DNA of 64,000 nt from Hydrolagus colliei (taxonomy: Eukaryota). Position 1 is the first letter of the stretch, and the number at the start of each line of letters is the position of its first letter. Shown here one piece after another: positions 19,274 through 54,794 of this stretch. The notes beneath the pieces are model-generated. The model had not been told where the DNA came from, did not search any database, and was given only the letters and a program-made list of their open reading frames with translations. The position numbers were made by a program, and so were the translations under genes. The stretch is taken from positions 186,001 to 250,000 of the forward strand of contig CM068769.1 in assembly GCA_035084275.1 (NCBI GenBank). The letters run 5' to 3'.

Positions 19274-19280
19274 CTAAGGA

Positions 19281-19319
19281 CCTTTTTGTACGAGAACGCA
19301 ATTGACTCTTATCACTGTG
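19281..19319 (-). other. 23-RSS of V 19320
   Basis: CACAGTG - 23 nt - ACAAAAAGG. Confidence 0.9.
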
Positions 19320-20249: not shown

Positions 20250-20295
20250 CTATCAGCGAAACAGCCAGCGACATCCAGATTAAAATTTCCCCCAT
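20250..20295 (-). CDS. Leader exon of V 19638
   Basis: MGEILIWMSLAVSLI G|gtaacc; 46 nt, phase 1. Confidence 0.85.
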
Positions 20296-21989
20296 CGCCT
20301 CAGCTCTATCTGAAGATGCCCAATGATCACTTGGAAGGTATTGATGGAGATTGGCTCCAGCGCTGTCATTCACGGCATCCAATGGGTAAAGTGCGGAACT
20401 TCCACGTGATCACGAAAAGTTTTCAATGTTTATTTTGCAGATGGTTAATAGGCTACAGCCAATTGATTGTAGAATCTTAGCGAATATTAGGAGGCCATAT
20501 AGAGACGGTTCATTCTGAACCGTAACAAGTCCCTGTGTGAATGAATATCTCAATGTCTACTATGTTATTATGTTGTCGATTACATGGAATCTGTGAAATA
20601 AATTAAGATGCTGTTAATGTTTAATATGTGTACGAAGTGTTGGATAGGATTAAGCAGTTTAGCAATTGACTGAAAATCATTATTCTGGAGCTCAGTGCTT
20701 AGTGAACTCGTCTTACAAACGTGAGACCTCTGGTTTCGAATCCGGGCAGCTTAGGGTCAAATTTATGAGACGTTTTCGAGGTCCACACGTCGAAAAATAA
20801 TTCACCGAAATTCTCGAAATTCTGTTTCCAAAACAACAAAGCAATTGAGAAAGATGGACATCTCAATCAGCTACATATGATGTAGTGTCATGTATTTTCA
20901 TTGCATATTTCTGCCAACTAGCAGCCAAACCTCTTTATAGTACAGTATATTATCTGGGAGACACTATAATGCACCCACATCAAAGGTGAAATACTGCAGT
21001 ATTTCCATGCCAAGGTCATCCAATCCACGACTGTTGCTAGGGACACTGATCTGCTTAATTGTCTACCGAGTTTTGCTCACAAATATACTGCAAAGCGCTT
21101 TGAGAGAAAGTCTAGATTACGTGAAAAGCTCTATGCCAAATGCAAGACTTACTATATTATAATTATTATTGGCAATTCCATTCTGGGGCCTTATTGTCAG
21201 GCTTATCAGTGCACGTTGGGGCTACAATCAGTTACATATTCAGTGAGTTCATTGTCACCAAATATACTGTAAATAAAGCTTTACTTACAAATAATCACAA
21301 GTAATGGTATGGTTTCCATCAACATCGTTTAGTCAGCGATTGCAAAGCAAAACTACATGAAACAGCTCCATTCTCGTTGGGAGGATTTCCCGTGTCGCTG
21401 GACTGATTAGGGATTTGCGCTCGAATTGCGGTTTAGGATGAGGGAGGACTTGAATGCTTGGTGGGTGGAGGAGGGATGGTCACTGTAGAGCCGGTTGCAA
21501 ACTAGGGCATAGATTAGGCATTACCGTAGGAAAGGGAATGGAGCCTTCTTGTGCCACGTTATCCATATTTATTTGCCTCCAATGTTTCTGTCAGTCTTCC
21601 TCAGCGCTCTTCACACACATATTGCGAAACCGGACACTCAGTTCCCTCTGGTAGAATGTCGCTGCTCATTTCGTGTCATTACATGTGATCCTTCAAATCC
21701 ACCCAAACAGTCATGGAACGAGTGATCAACCTTTATTTCTGTGCGGGGAATGTTAACATAGAAAACTGATCCATCGATCGATGTAGAACTGGTTTATTAC
21801 TTGCTGCGAGAGAAACAAAGGCCATGTGTGTGTGTGTGTGTTTGTGTGTGTTTGTATGTGTGTGTGTGTGTGTGTGTGTCTTTTTTTTTTTGTGTGTGTG
21901 TGTGTGTGTTGAGTAAAGAGCCTTGATCTAGTTTTCACGTGACTTGATCTGAACCTTGGTCCTCAGGTTTGCCAGGATAGTGCGGCACT

Positions 21990-22560
21990 CACTCTGTGTA
22001 ACTGAATAGCGACAACAATAACAACTTCGATTTATACAGCGCCCTCCAAGCTGGACGGCGTCTTAGAGCGCTTCACTGTAATGGATCCCTGGGGGCAGCC
22101 ATAGACTGTGAGGCAAGGGGGAGCGAAGGCACGGTCGAAAAGCAAGATCGTCAGCTGAGTCCTGAAACTAGGAACAGAGGGGAAGAGGCGAAGTGGGTGA
22201 GGACGGAAATTCCAGAGCCTCGTGTCACAGTGGCACAAGGCACGGCCGCCGGTGGTGGAGTGGAGGATTTGGGGAACAAGGGATTTACAGAACCGGAGGA
22301 GAGAAGGCAACGGGAGCTGGTTTGAGGAGAGAGGAGGACGGGGATGTAGGTGGGTGCAGACGAGTGGAGAGATTTGAAAACAAGATTGAGGATCTTGAAT
22401 TCGATCCTCTTCGTGGCAGGGAGCCAGTGAATTCCGACAAGGACTGTGGGAATGGGGGAGCGCAGTTTGGTGCGGATGAGAATACGGTCGCCAGATTATT
22501 GAATGAGTTGGATAATGTCATCCAATTTACAGCTCAATATGCTTGACAGGAATAGCATTG
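21990..22560 (-). mobile_element. L2 LINE 3' end with tail
   Basis: Minus-strand frames read L2-like ...SNSRSSILFSNL... and LRLFPSVPSFRTQLTILLFDRAF. The tail is gtgaagcgctctaagacg...ggcgctgtataaatcgaag(ttg)n. A similar copy lies at 39840-40075. Confidence 0.8.
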
Positions 22561-23511
22561 TCTCGGAAGCCGGGGTGGCTGAATATAATTTTATTGTGAC
22601 ACCCTCAGTGATTTCAGTGGCGTTGAGGTATCTAGAATTGGAGATATTGGAGAATTGGAGATATTAGGCAAACATTGATGGTGTGTTGTGGAGAGAGAAG
22701 TTTCGGTAGGTAGGGTGTTGCAGAGGCGTGGAGTGAAATAAAACAAAGGAGTATGTGTTTATGCGTGTGTAAGTGTGTGCTGAGTAAGGAGCCTTGCTTA
22801 AGTTTTCGTATGGTCCGGTCCGAACCTGAGTACTCAAGTTTGCGAGGCTATTGCTGTACCCACTGAGTAGTTGAATCTTAATAATAATAATCATCCTAGC
22901 ATTTGATATAGCGCTTTTGACATCTTATCGACAGTGTCTCAAAGCGCTTCACAGAATATACTGTAAGGTAATTGACTGTATGTTTGTGGGAGAAACGCTG
23001 CAGCCAATTGCGCACAGTAGGTTCCCCCACATACAATCGTGGTTTGAAAAGACCAATTTAATTTTGTTTTTTTTTATAGGGTTAATTATCAGGTGTGTGC
23101 GTTTGTGTGTGTGTGTGTGTGGGCGGAGGGAAGGGATACTTGCCGAATATTTTTTCCTGACCTGCCTGAATTCGAACACAGTTCCCACGCTCGTAAGGCG
23201 ATTGCCCTAACCACTGAGCCACAGGACCTCTAAACGCAACACAGGCAGGATTTACTTTTTATCATATTTACAACAGAGGTAGATCTACAGCACCTGGACC
23301 TGTAGCGTGAAACTCGTTCACTAATTGCTGCCTGCATTTACTGTGACCATTTACATTGTTGTGAACGTTTAGCAGACAAGTTGATGCTAGGTAAATGTGG
23401 TTTACACTCAGTCTGGCTACATACATGTTTGCTTCTCCCTGGGCTCCAAGGCCTCACAGAGGAACCGCATACACTTAAACAGATGGACAATGCACATGAA
23501 AGTGTGGAGGC

Positions 23512-23550
23512 AGTTTTTGTACGAGACTCGCAGTGCAGTGTGTCACTGTG
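23512..23550 (-). other. 23-RSS of V 23551
   Basis: CACAGTG - 23 nt - ACAAAAACT. Confidence 0.95.
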
Positions 23551-23873
23551 GTCATAGGCTGCGCTGCCAAAGGCACAGTGATACACGGCGCTGTCAGTCA
23601 CCAGCAGATCAGAGATGGACAAACTGGTGGAAGAATTGGAAACGTGCACATGAGCAGAGAAACGCTCCCCGAATCGTGCTCCTTTCTCTTGATTCTCACT
23701 CCCAGGGTATCTCCAAATGATAAACTGTGGCTGCTGGCCGAGGTGATGTCGGAACCAGTAAAGGTAATAAGAGTTTCTATCGGTGTTGTAAGTGCAGTGT
23801 AAAATCACATTGCCTTCTTGTTTGGCAATCGTTGTGGGAGGTTTTTGATTGACAGAGTCTCCACCACATTGTT
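23551..23873 (-). CDS. TRAV/TRDV: TCR alpha/delta V exon, apparently functional (delta-like)
   Basis: Acceptor attgtag|AA. Reads EQCGGDSVNQKPPTTIAKQEGNVILHCTYNTDRNSYYLYWFRHHLGQQPQFIIWRYPGSENQEKGARFGERFSAHVHVSNSSTSLSISDLLVTDSAVYHCAFGSAAYD. Confidence 0.95.
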
Positions 23874-24893
23874 CTACAATAAACAAAGAAGAACGCGACC
23901 AAAAAATATTCACACTTTGTCTGAAGTATGTTGTGTCTTGAGCAAATACTTACACAAGTCTTATACATGGTTCTCCTGCAGCTCCGTGGTTAGAGCACTC
24001 GCCTTACAAGCGTGAGACCAGCGTTCGAATCAATCGAGATCAGGGCGAAATCTTGGCATGTTTCCTTACTCCACACACAGACACACACACACACGCAAAC
24101 ACACCCACAAACATACCCGCGACTAAAAATCATCTCTCCAAATAAAACTACACAGCACTAAAAATAATTTGTTTCAATCTACGCTGTTTGTCGGGGTCGC
24201 TGCTGTGCGCAATTGGCTGCCGCAGCTCGCCCACAAGTATCCAGCCAATTTAATTAACAGTATACAATGTGAAGCGCTTTGAGACTTCGATAAGTTGCGA
24301 AAAGCGCTATGTGAAAGACAAAGAATATTAGCAGTAATATTATTATTATTAGTGCGGCAATATAATACTCACACTTTGCCTGATGTTGTTTGGGGGTCCC
24401 GTGGACTCCCTGCCGACGGCAAAAGCCTTACAGAACTGTGACTGTTTAATTTTCAATTAAAAGATCTGAATGTAATGACACAGCTGCACAGGGTATATTG
24501 TGATGTGAATTGCCGTGTGTCACTGTGAGCGACACCCAGCGGACAACTGCGTACATCTGCAGGCCTAGAATAAAGTACCAAATTAGTCCTTGAAATTTAT
24601 TTGAGCGGATTAATTACCCCACCCCCACTACCGAAAATAAAGACCCATTAAACTTTATAAGTCGCCAAATTATTATTGATTGGAAGCGATTCAACCGATG
24701 GTTAATGATGCTGAACAGAGGCGGGCGTGTGCTCTAAGGAAAGTCGCCCTGTACGGGAATCGAACCCAGGTCCTAGCGCTTGCAAAGCGAGAACTCCAAC
24801 CACTGAGCTACAGGACTGCCCTTCACCGCTGGTTCTTGATGAAATGGATGTGTTGATCAGGAGCGACACTGAATTAGCCAAACACGACCTCAC

Positions 24894-27405: not shown

Positions 27406-28704
27406 CTTATGAGGGCGAAATAACATAAAATATAAACAAAATGGCATGCAGATTGCTTCTTGATCAATATTAGTCATTGGTGAGACAAACGGTTGTACAT
27501 CTAAGCTGAAGCTGCGAAAGGTTACATGAGGGAATCTATGTCAACTGTTACAGGAAACACCTGTTGCAGTGCAATGTCCATTAGTAGCAGAAGTAGCTTA
27601 ATTTCATGTAAGTTGCAGCTCATGTTATATGTGTCATTAAGGCACCGCCTACTGGTGAGTAGCTGCAACAGCACGTGGACAATTGGAGACATGTGATCGC
27701 AAATTGGTTTTGTGCCTGTCTTAACTTCCCTGGTCCTATCTCCTCCTTTGGAAATTGATACATTAGTCTCATTTCCTGCTCATTCCTCAGGTTGGTGGGA
27801 AATTAGACTCAAATCCAATTCGAAATTTGTGTGCGTTTCGCCCACAAAATATTCAGTCAATTAACTTTATAGTGTATTCTGCGAAGAGCTTTCAGGCGTC
27901 AAGAAGACGTAAAACGCGATATGTCAAATGCAAGGACTAATATTATTACTATTTACATTCCTTGACGTTTATCTGCTTATATATAATCCCGCAATATAAT
28001 TTATTTCTCTACGCTTCCCCATTATTCATTGCTATCAATACAAAGAGGCTCCGAAAATGTATAACTTTCTGGTTCAATCCTTCCACCTTGCCCACATTTA
28101 CACCACACACATCATGTGGTCTACTGTAGTTCAGTGGTTAGAACGCTTGCCTTAAAAGCTTGAGCCCTTTGTTTCGAATCCAGGTAGTACAGGGCGAAAC
28201 CTTGGGCAAGTTTACTTACTCTACATGCCTACTAATAATCCGTCCCCAAATTCCTATTTTAGCAAGACCATTTTAAACTATTTAAGTCAAAATAATATAT
28301 ATTTAACAACACTAATCCTTACATTTGACAGTACGCTATATCACATCTTCGAGATGCATCAAAGCAATTTGCAGAATGTATTTTAAACGATTTAACTGCT
28401 GTTTGCTCGCATCAGTCATCCATTGAAAGAATGTTCAATTTATTATTGGTGGTAGTTGTAGTATTATTTCGAAGGAAGTTATGCCCCTGGAAAAAGGATT
28501 CACCGATCAACAATCGACGGATTCCTAGTTATAGCTCAGAAAACCGATTCCCGTGTGTGGAGTCAGCAATTTTGCTGAACATTTCGCATTGTCGGGAATC
28601 GAACCCATTTGTATCTCATTTGTGAGGCGAGTGTTTCTCTGCCGAGCTACAGGACTCCACATGGTAGTTTTTGTAGGGCGGTAACGTTGGTCTGTGTCTC
28701 TGTA

Positions 28705-29017
28705 GGGCTCGATGCAGAGTAATACACCGCCGTGTCTGTAACGCTCATTTGGGATATATTTAGTGGAACGGTTCGCCCCGCTTTATCCAAATTTGTTAAG
28801 AAACGTTCTTTTGCAAATTCTTCACGAATCTCTTTGTTGGTGCTGATGTGTACCATGAGGATATATTCTGGAGCTGCGTTGGGACAGTGACGGTACCAGA
28901 ATATATATGGAGTGCTGTCGCTTGTAGCTGTATAATTACACAACATATAGGCATATTCCCCCTCATTCACTGTCACAGTAGATTGGAGCTGTGTCATAGA
29001 GTCTCCACCACAAAGCC
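28705..29017 (-). CDS. TRAV/TRDV: TCR alpha-like V exon; ORF open but 2nd-Cys replaced by Ser and RSS heptamer defective (probably non-functional)
   Basis: Acceptor tttccag|GG. Reads GLCGGDSMTQLQSTVTVNEGEYAYMLCNYTATSDSTPYIFWYRHCPNAAPEYILMVHISTNKEIREEFAKERFLTNLDKAGRTVPLNISQMSVTDTAVYYSASSP. The RSS is TACAGAG-23-ACAAAAACT (28666-28704). Confidence 0.9.
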
Positions 29018-29336
29018 CTGGAAACCAGAAATACGTCATCATTCAATACAACAACAACAATTCTAATGATTCTCTTGTGATTAATGTGGCTGAAGTCGTT
29101 GATACGTCTCCAAATTCAAAGCATACAATTTTACAACACAGAAGTTTCATGTAAATGTTGACAAACTGGACAAACTTATCGCCATGTCCTTTCAGGGAAT
29201 TGAACAAAATCCCTATGAACACTGATCTAATGGACACTACAACTCTAAAATCTCTTGTTGGAGTATTAGTTATATTATGCAATGAAATTTAGGCGTTGGA
29301 TAATACATTCGGTAAAAATACTTATAGAATCCTTAC

Positions 29337-31105: not shown

Positions 31106-34100
31106 GATTTTGTTTAACGTTAATTGAACAAACAATAACTGCATAATAGTATCAGGGGAGATGTACAAAATGGAAATCGGTTCTCGGCTTTAAGTCTCTG
31201 AAAATTTTTACAGTATTGAACTGACTTGAGGCGCAAAGCAATAATAATTATCGTGGCTATTGATATAAGTTTTTACACATTCTCTGCATATCTTGTGGGA
31301 AGCTCATGGAATTTACCATCAAGTGAATTAACCGTACATTTGTGGTGACATTTGTCAGAGAATTGAGCAAAGCAGATTCCCACAAAGCTTCGTGGATAGA
31401 TGTGACCAATTCATCAATTTTGTTAGAATGACTACAGGTAATGTGCTGGGATTCAATTGGGGCATGATTAATTATATAAACACGTGTTAACTGATGAAAA
31501 TGTATTGGACGTTTACAATAGAACACTGACGAGAAACGCAAAACGTGATCCTACGTAATCGTGATGAAGAAACCCATACTGTTTGCGCTTTGTTTTTGAA
31601 AAATTAATTATATCTGAATTGAATACACTAATACCGCATTCAGCCACTGGGCAGTTATCGTTTTGTGAACACAAGGAGTGAATAGAGTGCAACACCGCCA
31701 ACTTTTGGACATATGGTTGTACTGCAGACTTTCATGTCAATGCCCATCTGCCTGGACTTGGGGAATATTGCATTCTCTCTCCCCAGCCAAACACGCCCAC
31801 CCCCACCCCCACCTCGCCGCACCCATTCAGTGCCATATTGCTTTCAGTTATTGGGTGAGTCAGAAAACTGGTAATAAGGTGCTCTGCGGAATTTTAACTA
31901 ACTATTTTTATCCCTGCTGTCAGCACATATTTGTCAGTCTTATCAACGGGTTCTGTGTTTGAATTGCTTCTGTGTATTTTGAATTACAGCAACAATAGCA
32001 TATACTAAGATAGCACTGCTTAAACAGAGTAGTGCGTCAGAGCTCGACATAGTTGTGGAGCATGATGCTTGGTCAGAATGAATGGGGAGAGGATCGTATG
32101 TACACCCACCCCTACATTTATCCGCTCACCATCCTCACACAACACAACCAGCTTCTCCCCATTCTCGCCTTCTCGCAGGCCATCTCAATATTTTACAGTT
32201 ACAAGAAATGTATGTAAGTATCAACGGTTTTACAATGTGCTCAACTGTGTCTCCTATTGGACCTCAAAATATTTAGAGAATCCAAACAAATCCCTACTAA
32301 TTCTGTGCAATTCACCTAAACATGGGATTTCTCATCTGTTCGAATGCAATGTGCTCTCCCTCTCAATGGAAAAAATGCATTCTCACTAACCAATTGTAGA
32401 GAGTATAAAGCTTTATATCCGCACACCAATGAAAACAATGCCTAAGAAAACCAACATTACATTGGTCATTTTAATACAGGAATGTTTGTGGTACACTGCA
32501 TTGCGAAACTGGCTGCCACAGTTCACATACATTTTACTGTATATGATGTGAGGAACCATGGGACGCCTAGACGACGTGGAAAGCTCTATTTCAAATTGAA
32601 GTTATATTATTCTCATTCTTATGATGATGACTGATAATCTCGTCCCTCCTCTTACTTTGTTTCATGTCCCCGGCCCTTCCCACAGCCTCATTGCCAAATG
32701 GGTTATCAGCTTATTATCTTCCCAATTCAGGAACTCCATCCGAGATTCACTTTGCAGTCCAACGTCACATTCTGACTTTCAAATCTAGCTCAAAACGTTC
32801 CTCTTTGAATCGTCATCACTAGTTCCCCCATCCCCATACACTCATCCCTCCCCTTCGCACCCCAAGCGCAAACACCAGCTCAGATACCAACCCCAATGTG
32901 TGCAGTCACTCGGGACGTTGTATCAAGAGAAAAAATATAGTTTATACATCTGATTTATGGTTGTTATCTCATGCTGACACAGACATTTAGATGGGATACT
33001 GATGACAGACCAGCCCGTCTGGCTGATGGAACGGTCTGCACTGCTGTTGACTGAACATGTGGGAATATGATGTGAACTGTAAATTAAATCACTGCCAATT
33101 AAATAAAAAAAACTATTGTAATAATAGTCGTAATCTTTGCATTGCTATTGCAGCATTTCACACATTAACGACGTCTCAAGGCGCTTCACAGAACAAATTG
33201 TAAAGTGAGTTGACTATGTATTTTGTGGTCAAAATTCGGAAAGCGATTTCCGCACAGCAGTATCCAAAAAAAGTCGTGGATTGAAATGACCAATTCTATT
33301 GCATTATTGTTGTTTTATTTTCGACGGATTATTATGTGGCTTGTGTGTGTGGAGTAAGGAAACGTGTCCATGGTCTGCACGCAGGTCTCATGCATATAAT
33401 GCGAGTGCTCGAACAATTGAGCGACAGGATCTACAAATTTTCAGATTTCGAACACAGATATATTCAAACTCACAGAGACTTTTGGTACTGTATGAATGTA
33501 ACTTCTATATAATCACGAGCATGTAAAGATTAGCGTTGCTAGTTTGTATCTATTGCCTTCTCCTTCTCTCTGAAGAATGTTTATCTTGACGCCAGTGAGT
33601 GAGCAATACGCATTACAGAATTTTCCTGATCTTTTTGCTCAACCCTCTCATCTATACAATCAATTAGGTTACCACAATGCAGTACGCAGACACTCTCATC
33701 ATAATAATCCCTTGCCTACTGGAACAACGTCAGTGAAAACAAGAGCAGTTGGAGACCACAGCTAGTTTTCATATCCCCCCAACTCCAATTCCACATCACA
33801 GGTCATGTCTTATCACCAACCAAAACATTGCTTGTTTTCGTACATTCTTCATCCAAATCATGTCCTATTACATACTTTATCATTCTTTAGCATTACATTC
33901 AGGCATGAAAAAGATGAAAAAGCAAGAGAATATATATATCTACATATGTCTCTCTCTCTAGAAATGTTCCTTTCTAAAAATTGTGTCAAATATATGTTAG
34001 CAACGCTTCCTAAAAGAACACCTATTTTCCCGTCAACATTAATAAAGTGATTTGAGCCATTTTACTGAAGCGAACGCTGCGAAATAAAACGTGACAGTTA

Positions 34101-34347: not shown

Positions 34348-34508
34348 TCAATGGAGACGTTGGCGCGACTGTTTAATAACCCTTTCTTGTCTCTTGTCTG
34401 GTTTCATTGGTCGGCATTCCACCACCAGCAACACAATACTAACCAGCAACACTACGATGGCCAGGCTGATCCGGACACTGTTGATAATTTCCATCCTATT
34501 CCAGCAAC
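34348..34508 (-). CDS. TM/cytoplasmic exon of an LRC-like (LILRA/NKp46/FCAR/GPVI-type) activating receptor
   Basis: Acceptor ctacctcacag|GT (phase 1). Reads CWNRMEIINSVRISLAIVVLLVSIVLLVVECRPMKPDKRQERVIKQSRQRLH*. Confidence 0.8.
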
Positions 34509-35680
34509 CTGTGAGGTAGACATGATTAGTCAATTAATCATGATTACACTTGCCAGCTGGTTGTCCAACAAAATGGAAAACAACAACTTCGATTTGTACA
34601 GCGCCCTCCTCGCAGGGCGGCGTCTCAACCCATCACCATGGTTAAACATATTCATTCAAGTTTGAAAGCGACACATCTGAATACTCCAATGTACAGTGAA
34701 ATGGATTAGAAGGTATTTAGGATGGTTGGCACGGAAACAACGACATTAGCATTTTATTTGAGTTCGCCTTTGATGTCGGGAATACTTCCCAATGAGAAAA
34801 AGTAGGAGATGGTAGAACATGGGTGAGATACGGCTTGATGAACTGGGGGTAAGTTGGATAGCGTGGTAGAGGTGAGGTGATAGAGGATGCAGCCGGTTAT
34901 TGGGTGGGATTAGGGGAGAGACGTGGAGGCGAGAGGAGATGGGGTGTAGAATGTGCTGTGACGCGCAGAGGGGAGAGTGGGGAGGGACGGTAGGAATATG
35001 TGGACGAAAGCAGGAGAGCAGAGAGTGAATAGGGTTTAGAGAAGTGGGAGAATAGTGAGAGGGAGAAAATCGGGGAGACGGACTGATGAAGAGATAAAGA
35101 TAGGGAGAGAGCAGAGAGAGGGTGGGTTGTTCGAGAGAAGAGTGCGAAAGCGTGTTAGAGGGAGTAGACGGAGAGAGGGAGAGGATAGTGACACGTGGGG
35201 AAAGAATGGCTAGAAGGTGATTGGGGGGGGGGCGTAGTGGAGAGAGGGGTCAGAATGGGGGAAGTAGAGATGTTGAAAGCGGGTATGGTTGGGAGGAAGA
35301 CGGGAGGATGGCAAAGGTAGATGGGGGAGAGCGGTTATAGAAGAGGCGGATTTGACAGTGGAGAGAGTTCGGAGAGGAGGAGAGACTGTGTGGGTCGCAG
35401 GAGTAGGGAGTGTGTGGAATCGAGAGGCAGGGGAAAGAGAGAGGGGAAAGATCACTGCACACGGGACACAATCTCTGCTGTGTAGCTATCACTTGGGAGT
35501 TTGGGTCTGGAAACGTTTTTACCGAGTGGATCAGTTTCCGTCCGTGTCAAACACTCAAAGTGACACAAGGAGACAACAAGGAAATGTGATCCTCTAGTGT
35601 AAAGGATGGTTACATCAGGGGCAGGTGTAAGTGGTCCAAAGGCAAAGATACTATTGTGTGAGATTTTACTCTGCTCTTAA

Positions 35681-35957
35681 TTCGCAGAAAGATTCTCGCT
35701 GGATCACTCTCTGGTGATATAAATTCCCGGCCGCCTATGTGTGTAGTACATTTACACGAGTAATTACCTGCACTGATGTTCGATGAGGTGAATGTAGCCA
35801 TGTTGTTTTTCTTTGTAACTGTTTGAGATATGATAAGCTCTCTGTCTTGGTAGAAAAAGAATTTGCTGCCAGGATGATTCACAGAACACGAGATCTCAGC
35901 GGTATCTCCTATCCCGGAATTCCGTGTTCAGGGAAATATTGGGTTTCTGGAGAGGAT
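35681..35957 (-). pseudogene. Disabled duplicate C2-type Ig exon
   Basis: DPLQKPNISLNTEFR, then a frameshifting deletion, then GDTAEISCSVNHPGSKFFFYQDRELIISQTVTKKNNMATFTSSNISAGNYSCKCTTHIGGREFISPESDPARIFL. The donor position reads ttaaga instead of gtaaga. Confidence 0.82.
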
Positions 35958-37037
35958 CTCGAATCCAAACACAATAAAGGTAATCTCACAGACACTCGTT
36001 TACTGACACGGATCAGTTGAGGTAAAAGTGACAATCGTTTTGTCTGATAGCGTGGAGTACACATCAAGAAATGTTGGTGGGGGAGGAGTGGGAGTGGCAG
36101 GTTTTTCGTTGCACTGTCTGAAGGATAGCAGCCGACGGCAGGAGTCGGCGGGCCATGAAGGACTGTGAGGCTACAGTAACACACAGCTCCAGATATGTGC
36201 AGGCTGACGGCAAAGCAGTCTGAACCTCTCTTGCTTTGTTCAAACATCTCGTTAATCAACACAATACAATAGAATTACATTTTGACGGCCGCGGTGAGGA
36301 ATTCAAACCGACAATTTAGGAGCTACAAGTACAAGTACGAATGTGACGGTGCAACTCACTATACAAAACTCAACTCAGATCCACTGCCATTACAGTTCCA
36401 CATTCCGATCAGCACCAATCTTAGCCCCACCCCCAGCTCAGAACTAATCCCATCTCTGGATGCAACTCCAGCTGAGCCCACAAATCGAGATCATCCCTCA
36501 ACCCCAAATCGGCCCATATCAGCCAAACAATGTCCCCAAAGGCAGCTCAACAACACCCCACCCCCATCTCAGCCGCACCCCAAGCTCAGACCCCACTCAG
36601 AAATCAGCCCCAACACCCAGATCCGCCAGTTCCAGCAACTCAGCTCCTTTCCACAGGTCAGATCAAACTCCAGGTCAGATGCCTTCCCCAACTCGGCCCC
36701 AAACCCATCTTAGCTCCTTAATTATCAACCTGATTAAAGCAGCGATATGTGGGTTAACAATTTCTTGTCTCACGCACTCTGAAATGGTATGGATTGAGTC
36801 GACATCTTTTTTCTCATTCTAGCCGAAACCTCACTTGCCTCATGGGGTCGCTCTCGAGTTTGTTTAGGAAACTGGTTTGTCATGGGGATGGGATTCTGTC
36901 CGGGTCAAACACTCCAGGTAACATCAGGAGACAACATGGAAATATGATCCACCGAAGTAAAGGGTGGACACAGGAGGAGCAGGTGTATGTGGTGCTAATG
37001 GTCTATGTTATTGTGTGATATTTTACTCAGCTCTTAC

Positions 37038-37319
37038 GCTGTACAGAGATTCCCACTCTATCACTCTGTGTTGATGTGAATCCTCTGCCGCCGATGTGTG
37101 TAGTATAGTTACACGAGTAATTCCCTACACTGATGTTGGATGAGGTGAATGTGGCCGTGGTGTTATTCTCTGGAGCTGGTGAAGTGATCAACTCGTTGTC
37201 TCTGTAGAAATGGAAATTGCTGCCAGGATAGTTCCCAGAACACGAAATAACAGCACTTTCCCCCCACACAAACACCCGGGAGACTGGCTTCACGGAAATG
37301 GTTGGTTTCTGGACCGGAT
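37038..37319 (-). CDS. Intact C2-type Ig-domain exon (LRC/LITR-like)
   Basis: ttttgattccag|AT...C|gtaaga; 282 nt, phase 1-1. Reads DPVQKPTISVKPVSRVFVWGESAVISCSGNYPGSNFHFYRDNELITSPAPENNTTATFTSSNISVGNYSCNYTTHIGGRGFTSTQSDRVGISVQ. There is no RSS. Confidence 0.88.
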
Positions 37320-38104
37320 CTGGAATCAAAACACAGTAAAGACCATTTCATAAATTCTCGCAACGCAATAGCGACATGGTTCAGATCAGAGTTAAACTGT
37401 TCATCAACTTGTCTCACCGCGTGGAATACAAAACGGGTGCAGTAGGAGGGATTGAGCGGTCGAAATCAGAAAATTTTCCTTACACAGTTGGAAGGGACGC
37501 ATAGGTTTGGGGACGGGGAGGAATGAAGAGTAGTGAGTCAATGGTAGGCACGGTTGCAGACTTGGCCAGGATGACCCTCTCTACTGATCTACAGATGTCG
37601 CTTCATACGACATGATAACGTTTGCGGCCAGTGAATCAAACCGAGAAGTTAAGAGCCACAGCTTCACAGAAAGTGGATTGAGAGGGTTGGATTCACTGCT
37701 TGAATGACAGTATTATCCCAAACATATCCCAGGGCGCACCACCATCTCAGACCCCAAACCTGAGTACTATTCGATCCGCAGTTCAGACACATACAAACTC
37801 AGCCCTATCACAGCTCAACCTACACACAGATAACCCCCATTCGTAGCACAGCCCAACACTCAGGTCACTCCAACCATGAGCTCAACCACAATCCCACATC
37901 ATCCTCCAAATAGCAGATCAGCCCCATTCGCAGCTGTTGATGTTTGTGTGGGAAGAAACATTTGGCAAATTTTCGTATTTCACCAACCACTGTAACGTCG
38001 AAATTAGCAGGAACCCGGTTGTTAGTCGACTAATGCTTCATCGGTAAATATTGTCCGCTTACTCAACATTATGTTTTGTGTCGCCATTTGAAGCATCTCA
38101 ATAA

Positions 38105-38380
38105 TTTGATATTAAATAAGAACATAAGAATTAGGAGCAGGAGTAGGCCATTCGGCTCTTCGAGCCTGCTCCGCCATTCAATAAGATCATGGCTGACCTT
38201 CTCACCTAACTCTGATTACCTGCCTTATCGCCCATATCCTAATATCTCTATTTTTCAAAAATCTATCTTTCTCAGCCTTGAAAATGTTCAAGGACTGATC
38301 ATCTACAGCCTTTTGTGGTAGGGAAATCCATAAATGCACTGCACTCAGAGTGAAGAAATGTTTCCTCAAGTCTGTCTAAA
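38105..38380 (-). mobile_element. CR1 LINE 3' end
   Basis: aagaacataagaattaggagcaggagtaggccattcgg... (reverse of the CR1 tail). Confidence 0.88.
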
Positions 38381-41300
38381 ATGCTGACGGAGAGGAACAC
38401 TGCCCTTCTATGAGAAATTATACAAAAATTCTCTCCGTTGCCTCTTCGCGTGGATTTTTACGAGATCTTACTTCCATTTGAGAACTGTAGAGTGCATTTC
38501 TGGCTCCCCTGACTAAACATCCTCATATACAGTTGGGAATATGGGGAGTCAGTCTACAGCGGATTCGGATCCAGAATCTTTAATTCCCTCCAATATGTCG
38601 CGAAGCGACCTCTGTGACCGCCTCAAAACCCATAGAACCAGTTACTCTATTCAAATGTGGAGCAAAAGACTGATTCACCTCCCACTCTCACCACCTTTCA
38701 CCAATATCTCTCCCGCCATCACTCACACCATCAGTATAAGGCCTTCAGCCTTCAAATAATCCAGGATCATAGTGGTTATAGCACCCGCCTCTCGCCAGCG
38801 AGAGACCTGGGGTTCATTTCTAGGAGGTCGAAATGTTGTGCAAACTTCCATACACGAAATAGCCTATAATAATCGATCAATTAAAAAAACTAACAAAAAT
38901 CTATGACTGTTTGGGGGACCCTGTAGGGCACAATTGGCTGCAGCATTTCACCCACACATATGCAGTCCATTCACTTTACAGTATACACTGAAGTGTCTAG
39001 AAGGTGGAAAAGGTCCTCTAACAATTTTCCATCCTTCCGCGGTGGAAGTGCACCCCAGAGACTGCCTGATTCGTCCCACCTTCCTCTCGTTCAAGTTCTA
39101 ACTGACGAGCTAGCTGTGTAATTGTGGTATTAGTTGCATCACCCCACACCCACCCTTCTGTCACCCCCATCGCTGCCCCACTGCGTAATTAGCCCAATTG
39201 CAGTTCGATCCCGCATGACTCCCATTACTTCATCAGTGCCCAACACCCAGCGCATTGAGGCGTTATCGGAAGGAGTTGTTTTAGATATTGTTTTTTGTGT
39301 AGCCAAGCCAGGAATTTTACACATCCTGGGGCATACCTGAATTGAAAGTCAGTTTTGTTATAGCAACTCACTTCCCCACTGTGTGTGGGAATTTACTGTG
39401 AGTAAGTCGGATGTTGTGTTTGCCATGAAAAAATAGTCAATGCGGTTTCAATCGAGATTGAGGCGTGGAGTCTTCCGAAAGTAAAAGGGTGTTGCTATTC
39501 TGAAAACAACTATTTCATTCTTCGTTTTAAATAGATCCTCTTTCATGATAGATTAAATCATGACTTTTCGCGCACTAATTATACAATGAGTTTACAGAGG
39601 ATGTGTTCTGTGTAGCCATCTGAGGTGTCTCAAGCACGTGATATCAACTGCATTTGTTAGTACTATTGTCCATTGGTCACAAAACAGTCAGGTTATTGTG
39701 GGAGGCTTTACAGATTGCTGAGAGAGCGCAGGCTCTCTCATCACGCGTACCTACTACATAGATTCTCACTCCGTCGCTCATTGGTGAATCAAACCTGGCA
39801 CGTACATTTGGTTGGCGTACATACAACAACAACAACAACAACAATTTACGTTTATATAGCGCCTTTCACGTCGGGAGGACGTCCCAAGGCGCTAAACAAG
39901 AGGCGTGTGACCCGAGCTGGGAGTGGAGTGTTTGGGAAGGGGTGAAACACGAAGGGGAGGTAAAAGAGTTCGGGGTGGAACAAAAGGCACGATCGAAGAG
40001 GAAATTCTTCAAATCGGCCTTGAAAGAGGAAAGGAAGAGGCGAAACGGAGGGATTGAGGGATGGCATTCCATAAGGTACACCGGTAACTTCCATTCATAA
40101 TCTGTGTTGAGGTAAATGTTGCGGTGTAACCATTCTGTTCAGCTGTTGCTGATGTGATGATGTTGCGATCATTGTATAAATAGAATTAACGGCCAGCATA
40201 GTGCCCAAAACACCTGATCTCAGCTCTTTCCCCACTACCAAACACACCAGCGGCTTGGTTTAGGCATATGGTCGGTTTCATGAGCGGAACCGGAATTAAA
40301 ACACTGAAAATATAGTCTCGCACATGCCTTCTCTATTCTGCACTGTGACAAAGAATATTTATATTGAAAATAACACCTGTCAATGGTAGATATATTATTT
40401 TGAGTTGGAACATAACGCATGCCTGAGCAGGGGACTGCAATTAACACGATATTTCAGCAGCTTTTAATAGTGTTCGCTCTGAGATTGGGAATCATTCTGG
40501 CTCCACGTCTTAGAATCTCGTTTCTGAAGCTGACGGTATTGGGTTGAAACAGACGTTGATGTCACAGTCTAGGCAGACGCTCTAGAGCAGCGATGAATGA
40601 GAGGGTCAATAATGATATACTGTCGTCTCGAAGAGACAGCAATTCCATAAGCACATGAACTTATGTCTCCACAAGAAAACAGAACAGAGTTTTTATTGCT
40701 GTCGTGACAAACCATCCTCCAGTTACAATTGGAATGTAGGGCTGCCAGGCTTCAGTGGATTGTGATCAGGGTCCTGGTTCTTACTTTTAAAATCTCACAA
40801 ACGCAGGTCCTCTAATCTCCATTTATTTGTATCTCAATTCAAAGACCTAGCCTCCACCAAGTCCTCCTACGAACAGGGCGGGCCCGTTGGTAAGAGGACA
40901 GGAAGTCATGGATGAAGGGTGGGACGAAGTTGTGGAGGGCTTCAAATGTGAGGAGCAGTATCTTGAATTGGAGCATTTTGATGGTGGGGAGGCAACAGAG
41001 TCGGGCAAGATGGGGGAGATGGGATCACATAGTTTGGAAAGGTTTAGGACAGGGGACTCAGCGTTCTGGATTATCTGCAGCCTGTGGAGCGGGGCATTGG
41101 AAAGGCCGACCAGCCATGCATTTGGATAAAAGAGTCGGGAATAATAAAGGCATGGGTGAAGGTTTCAGCGGATTTGGGTTTAGGTAATGGAGGAGTCGGA
41201 AAATGCTGCAGAGGTGGGGAGAGGCAGAGCGACTGATTGGGGGATGTGGGGGAGGAAAGGCAATTGATGGTTGTACAATGCACCTTCGTTCCTGCCTGTC

Positions 41301-42115
41301 TTAGAGAGGTTGTGTGTGCAACTATAGAGGTTGATGCAGCCAGATCCTGGTATAAGAAGGCGTTGGCGCGAGCGAATCAGTAGGACCTCGGTCTTGTTGA
41401 CATTCATCTGTAGAAAGTTTGCACTGATCTAGGAATTGATTTCTGACAAACAGTCTGGCAGGACAGAAGAAGTTCTGGAATCGAGGATTGAGGCAGACAG
41501 ATGGAGTTGTGTGTCATATGGATGTTGAAAAGTAGGGGCCAATAACAGAGCCCTTGAGGACGCCACAGGTGCTATTGCGGAAGCAGAGAAAGCTTTGGAC
41601 AAAATTGATGCGATGAGAGAGTAAGAGTCGTGCCAATCAAATAAACAATTGGGGAAAATTTATGTTAACCAGATTCTGTTGAATAGTAGATGGACAAAGA
41701 ACGAAATTTAGATGAACATCAAGGGAGAACAAACAAAGAACAATAGAGGAATGACAGAAAAAACAAAATAAAGCAGGAAAAAGTTCGAGGAGTGTCAGAA
41801 ACTATAAATTGACCAGGTGCAAAGAGTAATAGAAAGACCTCAAAAAATGACAAAAACAAAATACAAAATTAGTTTAACGAGCGCTTTGGTGGGAGTACAG
41901 AACAAGGTTGAACATAAAAACAATATAACTAAAACAAAGAATATGTTGCAGATTGCTTTCAGGGCAAAGCGGCCAATTGAATATGGGTTATATCGATATA
42001 AAATGATTGTGTTAAAGTGATTGTGCGGATTCGAATACAGTTGATTCGTAACGTTCGAATTAAAGGAACGAGCGAATCCACTTTGCGTTTTCGATACAAT
42101 AAAATTACAACTCAC

Positions 42116-42151
42116 CTGCAGATTCCACAGTCTTTCCCTCTAGAAGAATCA
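42116..42151 (-). CDS. 36-nt signal-peptide mini-exon of the LRC-like gene
   Basis: ttgtattttcttctgcag|TG ATT CTT CTA GAG GGA AAG ACT GTG GAA TCT GCA G|gtgagt. It is phase 1-1, and joining to the Ig exon gives ...KTVESA-DPVQKP. Confidence 0.68.
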
Positions 42152-44724
42152 CTGCAGAAGAAAATACAAGATCCGAAGAAGAATTATTAATAGTGTAATT
42201 CACAAAACAGGTGGCTGATCTGAAACAGAATAGCAACGTACTGATATACCCGGTCTCTCATTCAATCAAGGCATTTTTAACAACACGTCAGCAGTTTCAA
42301 GTCGTCACGAAAAAGGAGCCAGTGGTGGAGTAAACCAAAGCACAGACACGATTTGGAGAGAGTGGGGACACGGGTTAGGTCTCCTGAAGGACAGCGAGCA
42401 GTAACGCTGAAACGATGGTGTACGAGCTCTTGCACGGATACGATGAGAACAACAGGGGTAGTAGGACCTCTTGTCTGAACGGCCATTTTCTGTGCCGCGA
42501 TTTCCTGTGGAAGGATTGTTTGTGTTCTTGATTCGTGTCTCTGAGAAGAAGAAGCAGTTCATATACGGCCATAAAGCAGAACCTCCTCTCCCCTTGCTCC
42601 TATTTCCTCTCTCCTCTCATCGACATTTCCTTCTTCTCTCTATCGTCCTGCCAATCCTCCCTCTCCTCTCTTTCTTCATCAACGCTATCTCCTCTCTCCT
42701 CTCTCTCATCTACTTCGTCATCACTCCTCTCGAATTATATCCTCCTTCCTCTGCTGTCTCCTCCCTTCTCTCATTGGATATCCTCTCAACTGTTTTTATC
42801 CTCTCGAATCTCCTCTCCTGTCTTATCTACCATTCCCACTCTGTGCGTTCTGGAAACGTAGGAAGATAGTAACAGGAATGGGCCATTCAGCCCGTCCAGT
42901 CTATCTTGCCATTTCATTAGATTGTGTGATCTCCTTACGGATATTCTTATCTGTATCTCCACTGATGCTTTCCATTGAAATTTCCGGTTTTCTCCCGTAT
43001 TATTTCATACCCCGGTTTACCGATCGAATTATTGAAAGTATGAATGGATCAAGCATTTAACGCACCTACAAAGAGATAAATATAGCTTTCTACAACTCTG
43101 TGATCGAAAAAAATATTTCATTAATTAATTTTTTAATGGCCTGGTTTTACTTTTACGACTATGCACCCATTGTTTTGCACTCACCCACCAGAGGAATTCG
43201 CTTCACCCATCCACTGGCTGCTATGTATGCTTCTCTCTCTCCTACCTCTTGCCCCCTCTCTCCTTCCCTCTCTCCTCTCTCTGTGAGGGAAAACAATAAC
43301 AATAATTACATTTACGCAGCGCATGTAATGGCAGATGGACGAACCAAAGTGAACAATGTCGGATCTGTAAGATCTCACAAGACGGAAGGTATGGGCTAGG
43401 AAACTGATCGACTCCGCCCCCTCCATCAACCATCTCCAATAGTTTTATCGATGAATTACTTTACCCTCCCATCTCACCTCCACCTGTGTTTGAGTGTTTG
43501 TGTGTGTCCATGTGGGTGTGTGTCTCTGTTTGTCGGTGAAGTTCTGTTTGTGTGACATTCCTGCTCCACTCGCCCCTACCCAACCCCTCGGCTTACCATC
43601 TTTTCCCGCCTTTCTCTCCCTAACCCCATTTCCACAGATGTTTGTGGGGGACACCGCTGTGCGCAATTTTGTTGGCACGTTTCGCCCACAAATGCACAGC
43701 CGATTCTCGTACTATCCCTGAACCGACTCGTTCCTCCATTCTCTGGTCTCTACCTGAAGCACAGCACCTCGGGACGTCCTCCCGTCGTGAAAGGCGCTAT
43801 ATAAACGTAAGACTCCCGTCCTGCTTCCTGCCTGCCTGCTTGGTTGGTTGGTTGTTGAATTGCTTGGTTTGTTGGTTGGTTGATTGGTTGGTTGATTGAT
43901 TGATTGATTGATTGAAGAAGGCGAAGTGATTGTGTGATGGAGTTCTATACTTCGGTGCCGATAGGCTAAAGTGGGCGGATAATGCGGTGGTTACGAAAGA
44001 TGCAATAGGTCAAGGAGCAGAATAGGGGGCTAAATAGCAGTTCAGAGTAAAGCGGGATTCCGAGGACAATTTCGGAAATGAGATTAGCAACCACATTCAC
44101 CAAAGAAGAAAAATATCAGTTTCATCTTGACTACTTGGAAGTGCAGATGCAGCCAGTGGTGGACAGTGGATAATGGATAGTGGCTGTATCAGGCCTGCTC
44201 CGCGTCCACCGCCCTAACCGCCCAACCATCGGCGGCTGGGCTTTCAGCCGCTCTACTCCCACATTGCGGAGCTCCATCCCACATCGTCTCTGCCTTACTT
44301 ACTCCCTTTCCTCCTTCAAGGCTTGTCTCAAGTACTTCGTTTTTGACCGCACATTCAGCTGCCCCACTAACTCTTCCTGATCTCCCCTGTCCTTAGCCTT
44401 TCCCCAACCACCGGCTACCCACTACCACCACCCTCCTACCAACGCTCGCGTCCCGACCTGACTGTTCAGCGCTTTGAGACGTCCTCCCGACATGAAAGGC
44501 GCTATATAAGTGCAATTTCGTTGTTGGTGTATAGTGAAATTTACTATGTATTTGTGGGCGAGACATGGCAGCCATTTATAAACTAAATTGAAGCAACAAT
44601 CATGGTTTAAAATGACCAGTGTAGTCTTGTAACAACAATTGTGCAAGCAACAGAATAATAATAAGATCAATAATACAACAGTTGATATCCCCCCACACAG
44701 TGACGTTTCAAAGATTAACATCAC

Positions 44725-54757: not shown

Positions 54758-54794
<37 letters not shown>

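What the first reader, a model, noticed from the sequence alone, without database searches (positions are those of the whole stretch)
34348..42151. Non-rearranging LRC/LILR-like activating receptor gene nested inside the TCR alpha/delta V array
Seen: three minus-strand, phase-compatible exons with good splice sites. They are a 36-nt exon (42116-42151), a 282-nt Ig exon (37038-37319) and a TM/tail exon (34348-34508). Together they give xILLEGKTVESA-DPVQKPTISVKP...ISC...F.FYRD...GNYSC...SDRVGISVQ-R-CWNRMEIINSVRISLAIVVLLVSIVLLVVEC + short tail. The Ig domain has a 42-residue inter-cysteine spacing, Phe instead of the C-strand Trp, five N-glycosylation sequons and no RSS. Established: KP.I/L starts, F.(L/F)Y(K/R) C strands, GxYxC.Y and S..SD.V.I.V ends, a split signal peptide and an Arg-bearing TM characterise leukocyte receptor complex-type receptors (LILR, KIR, FCAR, NKp46, GPVI, OSCAR) and the related CHIR and LITR. 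Inference: this is an innate-type activating receptor gene embedded among TCR V segments in a cartilaginous fish. I am not aware of that linkage being described, and it bears on the origin of the LRC and of antigen-receptor loci. The first coding exon was not confidently located.
Basis: partly seen in the sequence, partly recalled or inferred. Interest (0 to 1): 0.92.

Follow-up and report, generated by a model that had tools for sequence, protein, structure and literature searches.

The report
LILR-like receptor gene among TCR V segments
A small, apparently intact gene for an innate "activating-type" immune receptor of the LILR/NKp46 kind sits between T-cell-receptor V segments in a chimaera-lineage genome. 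It belongs to a large cartilaginous-fish receptor family that some papers say does not exist, but its odd address looks like a stray, half-decayed copy, not an ancient linkage.

Summary
The three exons are real and splice in frame. I also found the missing first exon (44101-44125), which gives a complete 167-aa type I membrane protein. It has a split signal peptide (25 + 36 nt), one Ig domain, a transmembrane helix with an Arg at its outer edge, and a 21-residue tail without tyrosine.

One (35682-35958) has a frameshift and a lost donor. The other (40078-40290) has a lost acceptor and a stop, and is truncated.

Sequence, profile and predicted-fold searches all place the Ig domain with LRC receptors (PIR-B, LILR, NKp46, OSCAR, LAIR1, CHIR), ahead of Fc receptors.

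The gene belongs to a large Callorhinchus-type family with Arg-TM and ITIM-tailed forms, some fused to SRCR domains. More distant multi-Ig relatives occur in sharks and rays.

About ten V segments or V fragments lie on both sides on the same strand. Six have RSS-23-type signals and the V exons are closest to TCR V alpha/delta.

Five other family loci have no V segment within 10 kb. I therefore read the nesting as secondary, not primordial. Expression, adaptor pairing and synteny remain untested.

The parts
44101..44125 (-). Coding exon 1 (first half of the signal peptide): ATG AAA CTG ATA TTT TTC TTC TTT G, donor GT at 44100-44099. It encodes MKLIFFFF plus the first base of a Val codon.
   Evidence: Pattern scan and sequence. 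The C. milii paralog L002 has the same 25-nt length and CTTTG|GTGA donor. Exon 1 to exon 2 distance is 1.95 kb here and 1.83 kb in L002.
42116..42151 (-). Coding exon 2 (second half of the signal peptide), 36 nt. It encodes (V)ILLEGKTVESA plus the first base of Asp.
   Evidence: AG/GT sites. Homologous to the 36-nt exon of L002 (VIFLERKTVETA; 72% nt over 114 bp including flanks) and to the leader of P0067 (IFLEGKTGECAG).
40078..40290 (-). Ig pseudo-exon C. The acceptor AG is changed to GG, there is an in-frame TAA, and homology ends just after the F-strand Cys.
   Evidence: tblastn 47% identity, E = 1e-15. Sequence and alignment.
37038..37319 (-). Intact Ig-domain exon (282 nt, phase 1-1): LRC-type C2 Ig domain with Cys-Cys, F.FYRD, GNYSCNY and SDRVGISV.
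   Evidence: PDB phmmer top hits are LILRB2, LILRB1, PIR-B, LILRB3 and KIR3DL1. AF2 pLDDT 89. The Foldseek top 19 are all LRC receptors. dN/dS against paralog exons is 0.47-0.64.
35682..35958 (-). Ig pseudo-exon B. It has an 8-bp deletion (frameshift, then TGA) and the donor GT is changed to TT. It sits 1.36 kb downstream of the intact Ig exon, the same spacing as Ig1-Ig2 in paralog L001.
   Evidence: tblastn 59% identity, E = 2e-23. Sequence and alignment.
34348..34508 (-). Stalk, transmembrane and cytoplasmic exon, ending in TGA at 34348-34350. The stalk RCWNRMEIINS has an unpaired Cys. The TM is VRISLAIVVLLVSIVLLVV with Arg at position 2. The tail RPMKPDKRQERVIKQSRQRLH has no Tyr.
   Evidence: 82% nt identity to the TM exon of L001, with identical acceptor, no indels and the same stop position. 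Arg (His in P0001) is conserved at this position in P0003 and P0067.
33314..33319 (-). First AATAAA downstream of the stop (about 1.0 kb): candidate poly(A) signal.
   Evidence: This is a motif match only.
57333..57695 (-). Flanking V segment on the 5' side of the gene, with canonical RSS-23 (CACAGTG-23-ACAAAAACC at 57334-57296).
61961..62329 (-). Flanking V segment (5' side) with an RSS, CACAGTG-22-ACAAAAACC.
28596..29042 (-). Flanking V segment on the 3' side of the gene. It reads YYS instead of YYC, so it is probably a pseudogene. A V pseudogene with a stop at 29684-29929 lies 4.4 kb from the gene's last exon.
15628..23922 (-). Further V segments of the array, at 23491-23922 (leader at 24895-24939), 19235-19663, 17537-17968 and 15628-16081. 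Each has a heptamer-23-nonamer signal.

Best explanation
**What it is.** This is a structurally intact, non-rearranging gene on the minus strand. Its four coding exons are 44125-44101, 42151-42116, 37319-37038 and 34508-34348. It encodes a 167-aa type I membrane receptor with a single leukocyte-receptor-complex-type Ig domain.

**Family.** It belongs to a chimaera-lineage expansion of a family found across cartilaginous fishes. That family has paired forms. Some have a charged transmembrane residue and a short tail. Others have an uncharged transmembrane segment and a long tail carrying ITIM-like motifs.

**Likely mechanism (inferred, not shown).** The Arg at the outer edge of the transmembrane helix would pair with an acidic residue of an ITAM-bearing adaptor of the FcR-gamma/CD3-zeta or DAP12 kind. 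Ligand binding by the heavily glycosylated Ig domain would then deliver an activating signal in leukocytes.

**History (inferred).** The ancestral gene had two or three Ig exons. Two have decayed and would have to be skipped, as pseudoexon 3 is in some KIR genes.

**Position.** The location inside the TCR V alpha/delta array is most likely a secondary, lineage-specific landing of a family copy. One side-effect follows from the standard V(D)J mechanism: deletional rearrangement of the V segments 5' of the gene would excise it from that chromosome in those T cells.
For: **Gene model**
- Canonical splice sites and one open frame across four exons.
- Exon sizes, phases, acceptor and stop are conserved with C. 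milii paralog loci.

**Family membership**
- E = 2e-67 and 60% identity to a C. milii protein with the same TM and tail.
- 567 hits in 1.8 billion representative proteins, with identities of 50-65% (the Callorhinchus sequences) or 20-35% (elasmobranch sequences).
- The holocephalan clade has 99/95 support. The window domain's terminal branch is 0.22, equal to the family median, against 0.37 for the dead exon B.

**LRC type**
- Family profile against PDB: PIR-B 1e-13, LILRB2 9e-10, LILRB1 2.5e-8, NKp46 5e-8 and OSCAR 1e-6, ahead of FcRL5 5e-6 and FcεRIα 3e-5.
- AF2 model pLDDT 89.
- The Foldseek top 19 are all LRC receptors (NKp46, LILRB4, LAIR1, LILRA5, PirB, CHIR-AB1, LILRA2, OSCAR) at TM 0.70-0.82. 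Fc receptors score 0.59-0.71.
- The second leader exon is 36 nt, not the 21 nt typical of FcR/FcRL genes (PMC2413239).

**Activating architecture**
- Arg at TM position 2 and no Tyr in the tail.
- ITIM-like VTYATV and IIYANL motifs in paralogs P0011, P0061 and P0202.

**Some constraint**
- dN/dS is 0.47-0.64 against paralog exons.

**Secondary position**
- L001, L002, L005, L003 and L004 lack V segments within 10 kb.

**Skipped Ig exons have a precedent**
- In KIR genes an Ig exon present in the DNA is left out of the transcripts (PMC6288254).
Against: - There is no transcript evidence of any kind. The exact 167-aa product is not among 15 billion catalogued proteins.
- Two of three Ig exons are dead. 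Exon B keeps an AG acceptor, so it might be included and cause a premature stop.
- The intact domain departs from family near-invariant residues at three positions (L3V, L38F, E85Q) and has W for the usual R in FVRGES.
- The stalk has an unpaired Cys that is absent from paralogs.
- The coding sequence is only 504 nt, so an open frame is weak proof of function.
- A published screen reported no FcR-gamma chain in sharks (PMC4016189), so the adaptor is unidentified.
- The Arg lies at the very edge of the predicted helix and could be juxtamembrane, not buried.
- The flanks examined at other family loci are only 10 kb, and three of those loci are on unplaced scaffolds.
Confidence: 0.6

Rival explanations
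1. It is a dying gene relic: an unexpressed or non-functional remnant of a multi-Ig family member that landed in the V array and is decaying. The remaining open frame survives only because it is short.
For: - Two of three Ig exons carry disabling lesions.
- It has unusual substitutions at conserved family positions and an odd stalk Cys.
- The product is not in the protein collection.
- The neighbourhood is rich in V pseudogenes and repeats.
Against: - All four retained exons keep canonical splice sites, the start codon with A at -3, the frame and the stop position.
- The terminal branch equals the family median, while the dead exon B is longer.
- dN/dS is below 1.
- Single-Ig LRC receptors exist (LAIR1, CHIR-AB1).
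Confidence: 0.3
2. The linkage is ancient. LRC-type receptor genes and TCR alpha/delta V segments were neighbours in the jawed-vertebrate ancestor, and this gene is a surviving trace.
For: - The gene is flanked on both sides by same-strand V segments, with no assembly gap between 4242 and 64000.
Against: - Five other family loci in three species show family clusters without V segments.
- Family domains form an unresolved, recently expanding polytomy, with no sign that this copy is basal.
- Unrelated genes are known to sit inside TCR loci (from my own knowledge: olfactory receptor genes in TRA, trypsinogen genes in TRB), so nesting alone says little.
Confidence: 0.08
3. The juxtaposition is an assembly artefact that joins a receptor-family contig to a TCR V contig.
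For: Multigene immune families and repeat-rich regions are prone to mis-joins. Several C. milii family members sit on unplaced scaffolds.
Against: - The only N run is at 4099-4241, far from the gene.
- V segments lie on both sides, 4.4 kb and 13 kb away, so two mis-joins would be needed.
Confidence: 0.05
4. The family is better filed with Fc-receptor-like (FcRL/LITR) genes than with LRC genes, as NCBI's automatic names for elasmobranch relatives suggest.
For: - Relatives are named 'Fc receptor-like protein 5' in Scyliorhinus, Mobula and Cetorhinus.
- FcRL5 and FcεRIα are significant profile hits.
- LRC and FcR families are known to be related.
Against: - LRC proteins outrank Fc receptors in sequence and fold searches.
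- The second leader exon is 36 nt, not 21 nt (PMC2413239).
- Other C. milii members are automatically named OSCAR and alpha-1B-glycoprotein-like.
Confidence: 0.1

Closest known systems
Activating LRC receptors of mammals and birds (LILRA, PIR-A, NKp46, OSCAR, FcαRI, GPVI, CHIR-A)
   Same: - C2-type Ig domain with KP.IS start, F/Y.LYR C strand and G.Y.C.Y F strand.
- Best sequence and fold matches.
- Two-exon leader with a 36-nt second exon.
- One phase-1 exon per Ig domain.
- Arg near the outer end of the TM helix.
- Short tail without tyrosine.
   Different: - Only one Ig domain is left.
- It sits in a TCR V array, not in an LRC-like gene cluster.
- It comes from a cartilaginous fish.
- Adaptor and ligand are unknown.
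- Identity to any solved LRC domain is only 20-26%.
Callorhinchus milii family members (XP_ entries automatically named IGSF1-like, alpha-1B-glycoprotein-like, OSCAR, DMBT1-like)
   Same: - 55-68% identical Ig domains.
- Same leader, TM and tail exons.
- The stop codon is at the same position.
   Different: - Those have two to six Ig domains, and some have N-terminal SRCR domains.
- The loci seen have no V segments nearby.
- None is identical to the window gene.
KIR genes with pseudoexon 3
   Same: An Ig-domain exon remains in the gene but is left out of the mature transcript (PMC6288254).
   Different: - In KIR the skipped exon has intact splice sites.
- Here both extra exons carry disabling lesions, and skipping has not been shown.
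Single-Ig LRC receptors LAIR1 and CHIR-AB1
   Same: One LRC-type Ig domain on a TM stalk. Both are among the top structural matches.
   Different: - LAIR1 is inhibitory, with ITIMs.
- CHIR-AB1 carries both a TM charge and a tail motif.
- The window protein has only the TM charge.
Non-TCR genes embedded in TCR loci (olfactory receptor genes in TRA/TRD, trypsinogen genes in TRB; from my own knowledge)
   Same: A non-rearranging gene lies between V segments of a TCR locus.
   Different: Here the guest is itself an Ig-superfamily immune receptor.

Membership tests
LRC-type Ig receptors (LILR/PIR, KIR, NKp46, OSCAR, LAIR, CHIR) | Ig domain of the LRC C2 type by sequence | tested here: met
   The single sequence finds LILRB2 at 2.7e-5, then LILRB1, PIR-B, LILRB3 and KIR3DL1. 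The family profile finds PIR-B at 1e-13, LILRB2 9e-10, NKp46 5e-8 and OSCAR 1e-6, ahead of FcRL5 at 5e-6.
LRC-type Ig receptors (LILR/PIR, KIR, NKp46, OSCAR, LAIR, CHIR) | Ig domain of the LRC type by three-dimensional fold | tested here: met
   AF2 model pLDDT 89. Foldseek ranks 1-19 are all LRC receptors at TM 0.70-0.82. Fc receptors score 0.59-0.71.
LRC-type Ig receptors (LILR/PIR, KIR, NKp46, OSCAR, LAIR, CHIR) | Signal peptide split over two exons, the second of 36 nt | tested here: met
   The leader exons are 25 + 36 nt in the window and in paralog L002. That 36 nt marks LRC genes is from my own knowledge. The 21-nt rule for FcR genes is in PMC2413239.
LRC-type Ig receptors (LILR/PIR, KIR, NKp46, OSCAR, LAIR, CHIR) | Paired forms: charged TM with short tail versus ITIM tail | tested here: met
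   The window protein has Arg at TM position 2 and no Tyr. Paralogs P0011, P0061 and P0202 have VTYATV and IIYANL.
LRC-type Ig receptors (LILR/PIR, KIR, NKp46, OSCAR, LAIR, CHIR) | Location in a cluster syntenic with the LRC | tested here: not met
   This copy is flanked by TCR-type V segments. Synteny of the rest of the family could not be examined, because the C. milii loci seen are on unplaced scaffolds.
LRC-type Ig receptors (LILR/PIR, KIR, NKp46, OSCAR, LAIR, CHIR) | Phylogenetic grouping with tetrapod LRC domains to the exclusion of FcRL/LITR | not tested
   No reference set of LILR, KIR, CHIR, LITR and FcRL domains could be fetched. Only score rankings are available.
Activating immunoreceptors | Association with an ITAM adaptor through the TM charge | not testable with these tools
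   This is inferred from the Arg position only. PMC4016189 reports no FcR-gamma chain found in sharks.
Fc receptor / FcRL family | 21-nt second leader exon and FcR-type Ig domains | tested here: not met
   The second leader exon is 36 nt. FcR and FcRL hits are weaker than LRC hits. The 21-nt rule is from PMC2413239.
Rearranging antigen-receptor gene segment | Recombination signal sequence next to the Ig exon | tested here: not met
   No heptamer-spacer-nonamer lies next to 37038-37319 in the scan, which does find the RSS of six V segments.
TCR alpha/delta V array | V-set exons followed by RSS-23, all in one orientation | tested here: met
   Pfam V-set matches at 4e-8 to 3e-18. RSS sites at 62012, 57334, 23550, 19319, 17621 and 15714. 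About ten V segments or V fragments, all on the minus strand.
TCR alpha/delta V array | V sequences closest to V alpha/delta rather than to beta, gamma or Ig | tested here: met
   In the V profile search of PDB, every top hit that carries a single V domain is a TCR alpha chain or V delta 1. The only named hit outside cartilaginous fishes is a TCR alpha V region.
TCR alpha/delta V array | J alpha, C alpha, D/J/C delta downstream | not testable with these tools
   These lie outside the 64-kb window.

The most novel reading that the evidence does not exclude
LRC-type innate receptor genes and TCR alpha/delta V segments were already neighbours in the common ancestor of jawed vertebrates. This chimaera gene would be a surviving piece of that primordial immune gene complex, and orthologs would sit in the TCR alpha/delta locus of other cartilaginous fishes.
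Probability: 0.08. Interest if true: 0.85.

Novelty: new member of a known kind. Interest (0 to 1): 0.5.

Why it matters
**Origin of the LRC.** Two papers in the searchable library state that cartilaginous fishes lack LRC-type receptors with only C2 domains, Fc-receptor-like molecules or both (PMC4016189, PMC13337447). The window gene and its relatives contradict this:
- There are hundreds of hits, from chimaera to rays and sharks.
- The family has forms with a charged transmembrane residue and forms with ITIM-bearing tails.
- It has the 36-nt leader exon and an LRC-type predicted fold.

This would move the origin of this receptor kind back to the jawed-vertebrate ancestor. It also raises the question of which adaptor these receptors use.

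**The address inside the V array.** This is a smaller point.
- It gives a natural case of an immune receptor gene that V-J joining would delete from some T cells.
- It gives one data point, so far unsupported by other loci, for old linkage between innate and rearranging receptor genes.

Tried and rejected
- **Single V segment search.** It found nothing in the word-indexed protein search. A profile of seven V segments worked.
- **SRCR exons.** C. milii paralogs have them. tblastn found none in the window, so the gene is not an SRCR fusion.
- **ITIM-tail or uncharged-TM exons.** The same search, which included ITIM-tailed and uncharged-TM paralogs as queries, matched only the three Ig exon copies and the Arg-TM exon in the window.
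- **Literature on LRC-like genes in sharks or linkage to TCR loci.** Searches gave no description, only statements of absence. Two searches for a citable source of the 36-nt LRC leader rule failed, so that rule is marked as my own knowledge.
- **Context look-ups.**
  - The catshark relative failed because its gene range is too long.
  - P0067 and P0018 were not on record.
  - The skate and basking-shark gene models lack leader and TM exons, so the 36-nt test could not be extended to elasmobranchs.
- **Species.** This is not settled. The V segments are at most 68% identical to C. milii V proteins and the Ig domain at most 68% identical to C. milii Ig domains. Shared repeats are at most about 80% identical over 100 bp or more. 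This suggests a chimaera other than C. milii, or unannotated paralogs.
- **Domain tree.** It is a polytomy within the chimaera clade, so it cannot date the copy.

Full report
**Observation.** Joined, they give one open frame ending in TGA at 34348-34350. The Ig exon has 42 residues between its cysteines. It has Phe in the C strand and five N-x-S/T sequons, two of them overlapping. No recombination signal lies next to it, in a scan that does recover the signals of six V segments.

**The missing first exon.** Family members from Callorhinchus milii have leaders such as MESLFIIFVIFLERKTVETAEG (P0009) and MKTFVVLLLVIFLEGKTGECAG (P0067).
- In the P0009 locus (L002), exon 1 is 25 nt (ATGGAATCATTGTTTATTATCTTTG|GTGAGT). 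It lies 1.83 kb upstream of a 36-nt second exon.
- A scan upstream of 42151 found ATGAAACTGATATTTTTCTTCTTTG|GTGAAT at 44125-44101, which is 1.95 kb upstream. It has the same length and donor context, and an A at -3.
- The full model is 25 + 36 + 282 + 161 = 504 nt, or 167 aa. It starts MKLIFFFFVILLEGKTVESA, then the Ig domain, stalk, TM helix and tail.
- This exact protein is not in the 15-billion-sequence collection.

A tblastn search with the Ig domain finds two more copies on the same strand. Alignment with the paralog's exons shows the lesions.
- Copy B (35682-35958) has an 8-bp deletion that leads to TGA, and its donor GT has become TT.
- Copy C (40078-40290) has its acceptor AG changed to GG, an in-frame TAA, and no homology after the F-strand Cys.
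- The intact exon and copy B are 1.36 kb apart, like Ig1 and Ig2 of paralog L001.
- The ancestor therefore had at least two Ig domains, possibly three, and the gene now encodes one.
- KIR genes offer a precedent for an Ig exon that stays in the gene but is left out of transcripts (PMC6288254).

**What kind of Ig domain.**
- The single sequence finds only LRC proteins at the top of a PDB search: LILRB2, LILRB1, PIR-B, LILRB3, LILRA2 and KIR3DL1.
- A profile of 30 chimaera-lineage domains gives PIR-B 1e-13, LILRB2 9e-10, LILRB1 2.5e-8, NKp46 5e-8 and OSCAR 1e-6. FcRL5 (5e-6), FcεRIα (3e-5) and KIR3DL1 (1.5e-3) follow.
- An AlphaFold2 model built on that alignment has mean pLDDT 89.
- The first 19 Foldseek matches in the PDB are all LRC receptors: NKp46, LILRB4, LAIR1, LILRA5, PirB, CHIR-AB1, LILRA2 and OSCAR, at TM 0.70-0.82. 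Fc receptors follow at 0.59-0.71.
- The second leader exon is 36 nt. FcR-family genes use 21 nt (PMC2413239). That 36 nt is the LRC pattern is my own knowledge, and I could not find a citable source in the library.
- Pfam sees only generic Ig models, at or just below threshold (Ig_3 31.1 bits against a 30-bit cutoff for the isolated domain; 29.6 bits for the spliced protein).

**Transmembrane region and tail.**
- The best 19-residue hydrophobic window is VRISLAIVVLLVSIVLLVV, with Arg at position 2. The tail has no tyrosine.
- The exon is 82% identical in DNA to the TM exon of paralog L001, with the same acceptor, no indels and the same stop position.
- Arg is conserved at that position in P0003 and P0067, and is His in P0001.
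- Other family members have an uncharged TM segment and long tails with VTYATV and IIYANL motifs.
- By architecture this is a paired activating/inhibitory family. Pairing with an ITAM adaptor is inference. A published screen found no FcR-gamma chain in sharks (PMC4016189).

**The family.**
- The spliced protein matches nine C. milii proteins at E = 2e-67 to 8e-26.
- An exhaustive search of 1.8 billion representatives gave 567 hits.
- Domain identities fall into two groups. One is 50-65% (the Callorhinchus sequences). The other is 20-35% and comes from multi-Ig proteins of rays and sharks, with up to 23 domains.
- Automatic names include IGSF1-like, alpha-1B-glycoprotein-like, OSCAR and FcRL5. 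For members with N-terminal SRCR domains the names are DMBT1-like or SSC5D-like.
- In a maximum-likelihood tree the chimaera-lineage domains form one clade (99/95) that is unresolved inside. The window's intact domain has a terminal branch of 0.22, the family median. The dead copy B has 0.37.
- dN/dS of the intact exon against three paralog exons is 0.47-0.64.

**Surroundings.**
- About ten V segments or V fragments lie on the same strand, at about 15.6, 17.5, 19.0, 19.2, 23.5, 27.1, 28.6, 29.7, 57.3 and 62.0 kb.
- Seven match Pfam V-set. Six have heptamer-22/23-nonamer signals.
- In PDB searches, every top hit that carries a single V domain is a TCR alpha chain or V delta 1.
- A profile search finds C. 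milii V domains at up to 68% identity. The only named hit outside cartilaginous fishes is a TCR alpha V region.
- A long run of V segments without D, J or C fits a TCR locus, not the Ig mini-clusters of cartilaginous fishes (PMC13337447 for the cluster organisation).
- The gene occupies 34.3-44.1 kb of a 27-kb gap free of V segments. It is 4.4 kb from the nearest V on one side and 13 kb on the other.
- The only N run is at 4099-4241.

**Is the position meaningful?** I looked at five other family loci:
- three on unplaced C. milii scaffolds (L001, L002, L005);
- one near the end of a little-skate chromosome (L003);
- one in the basking shark (L004).

All carry family Ig exons, several in tandem. 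None has a V segment within 10 kb. Together with the two decayed exons, this favours a stray copy that landed in the V array. It does not favour a relic of ancient linkage. The flanks are short, so the test is weak.

One consequence follows from the standard V(D)J mechanism. If the J and C segments lie downstream of these V segments, joining of the V segments at 57 and 62 kb, or of any further upstream, would delete the gene from that chromosome.

**Species.** The best matches are all from Callorhinchus milii, but none exceeds 68% protein identity. Shared repeats reach only about 80% identity over 100 bp or more. The source is a chimaera-lineage genome. I could not tell whether it is C. milii itself.

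**Verdict.**
- The assignment to LRC/LILR-like receptors is well supported.
- 'Activating' is an inference from architecture.
- 'Nested in a TCR V alpha/delta array' is supported within the limits of the window.
- The wider point is that cartilaginous fishes have a large LRC-type paired-receptor family, contrary to statements in PMC4016189 and PMC13337447. I consider this more interesting than the address of this one copy.

Noticed in passing
C. milii proteins P0009, P0011, P0021, P0056, P0064, P0066, P0067, P0196; locus L002 13142-15312 and 24117-29455: Many Callorhinchus family members join one to three SRCR domains to the LRC-like Ig domains. Both ITIM-tailed and Arg-TM forms do this. I know of no LRC receptor with this domain combination.
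   Followed up: partly
P0012 (Narcine, 2368 aa), P0014 (Pristis, 3218 aa), P0015, P0019 and others: Elasmobranch relatives are very long chains of up to 23 of these Ig domains. They are automatically named FcRL5-like or uncharacterized.
   Followed up: no
Literature: PMC4016189 and PMC13337447: PMC4016189 states that sharks, including the elephant shark, lack LRC-type C2-only receptors, FcRL molecules and the FcR-gamma chain. PMC13337447 repeats this for classical Fc receptors and FcRL molecules. The protein and fold searches here contradict the first two points.
   Followed up: partly
window 17537-17968, 28596-29042, 29684-29929, 15628-16081 (all minus strand): Several V segments look non-functional. 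One lacks the first Cys, one has YYS instead of YYC, one has an in-frame stop, and one ends VYPLC.
   Followed up: no
window 570-2135 (-) and 62847-63608 (+): There is a 521-aa gag-like ORF with a weak PNMA match. There is also a 253-aa ORF that is 72.5% identical in DNA to a repeat in C. milii locus L001 (5041-5712). Both are presumably retroelement remnants.
   Followed up: partly
window 44195-44530 and 39821-39930: Short interspersed repeats lie just upstream of exon 1 and inside intron 2. They are shared with several places in the C. milii loci L001 and L005, at 67-93% identity.
   Followed up: no
window 6000-7600, 9350-9700, 12450-13200, 44700-45400, 47850-48600, 50650-51400, 54000-54900: Long low-complexity stretches, C/A- or T/G-rich, give spurious long ORFs on both strands and strong local GC skew.
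   Followed up: no
window 34473-34508 (-), stalk residues RCWNRM: The stalk differs completely from paralogs (GSFSAQ, GYLTTQ) without any indel. It introduces an unpaired extracellular Cys, which could allow disulfide-linked dimers.
   Followed up: no
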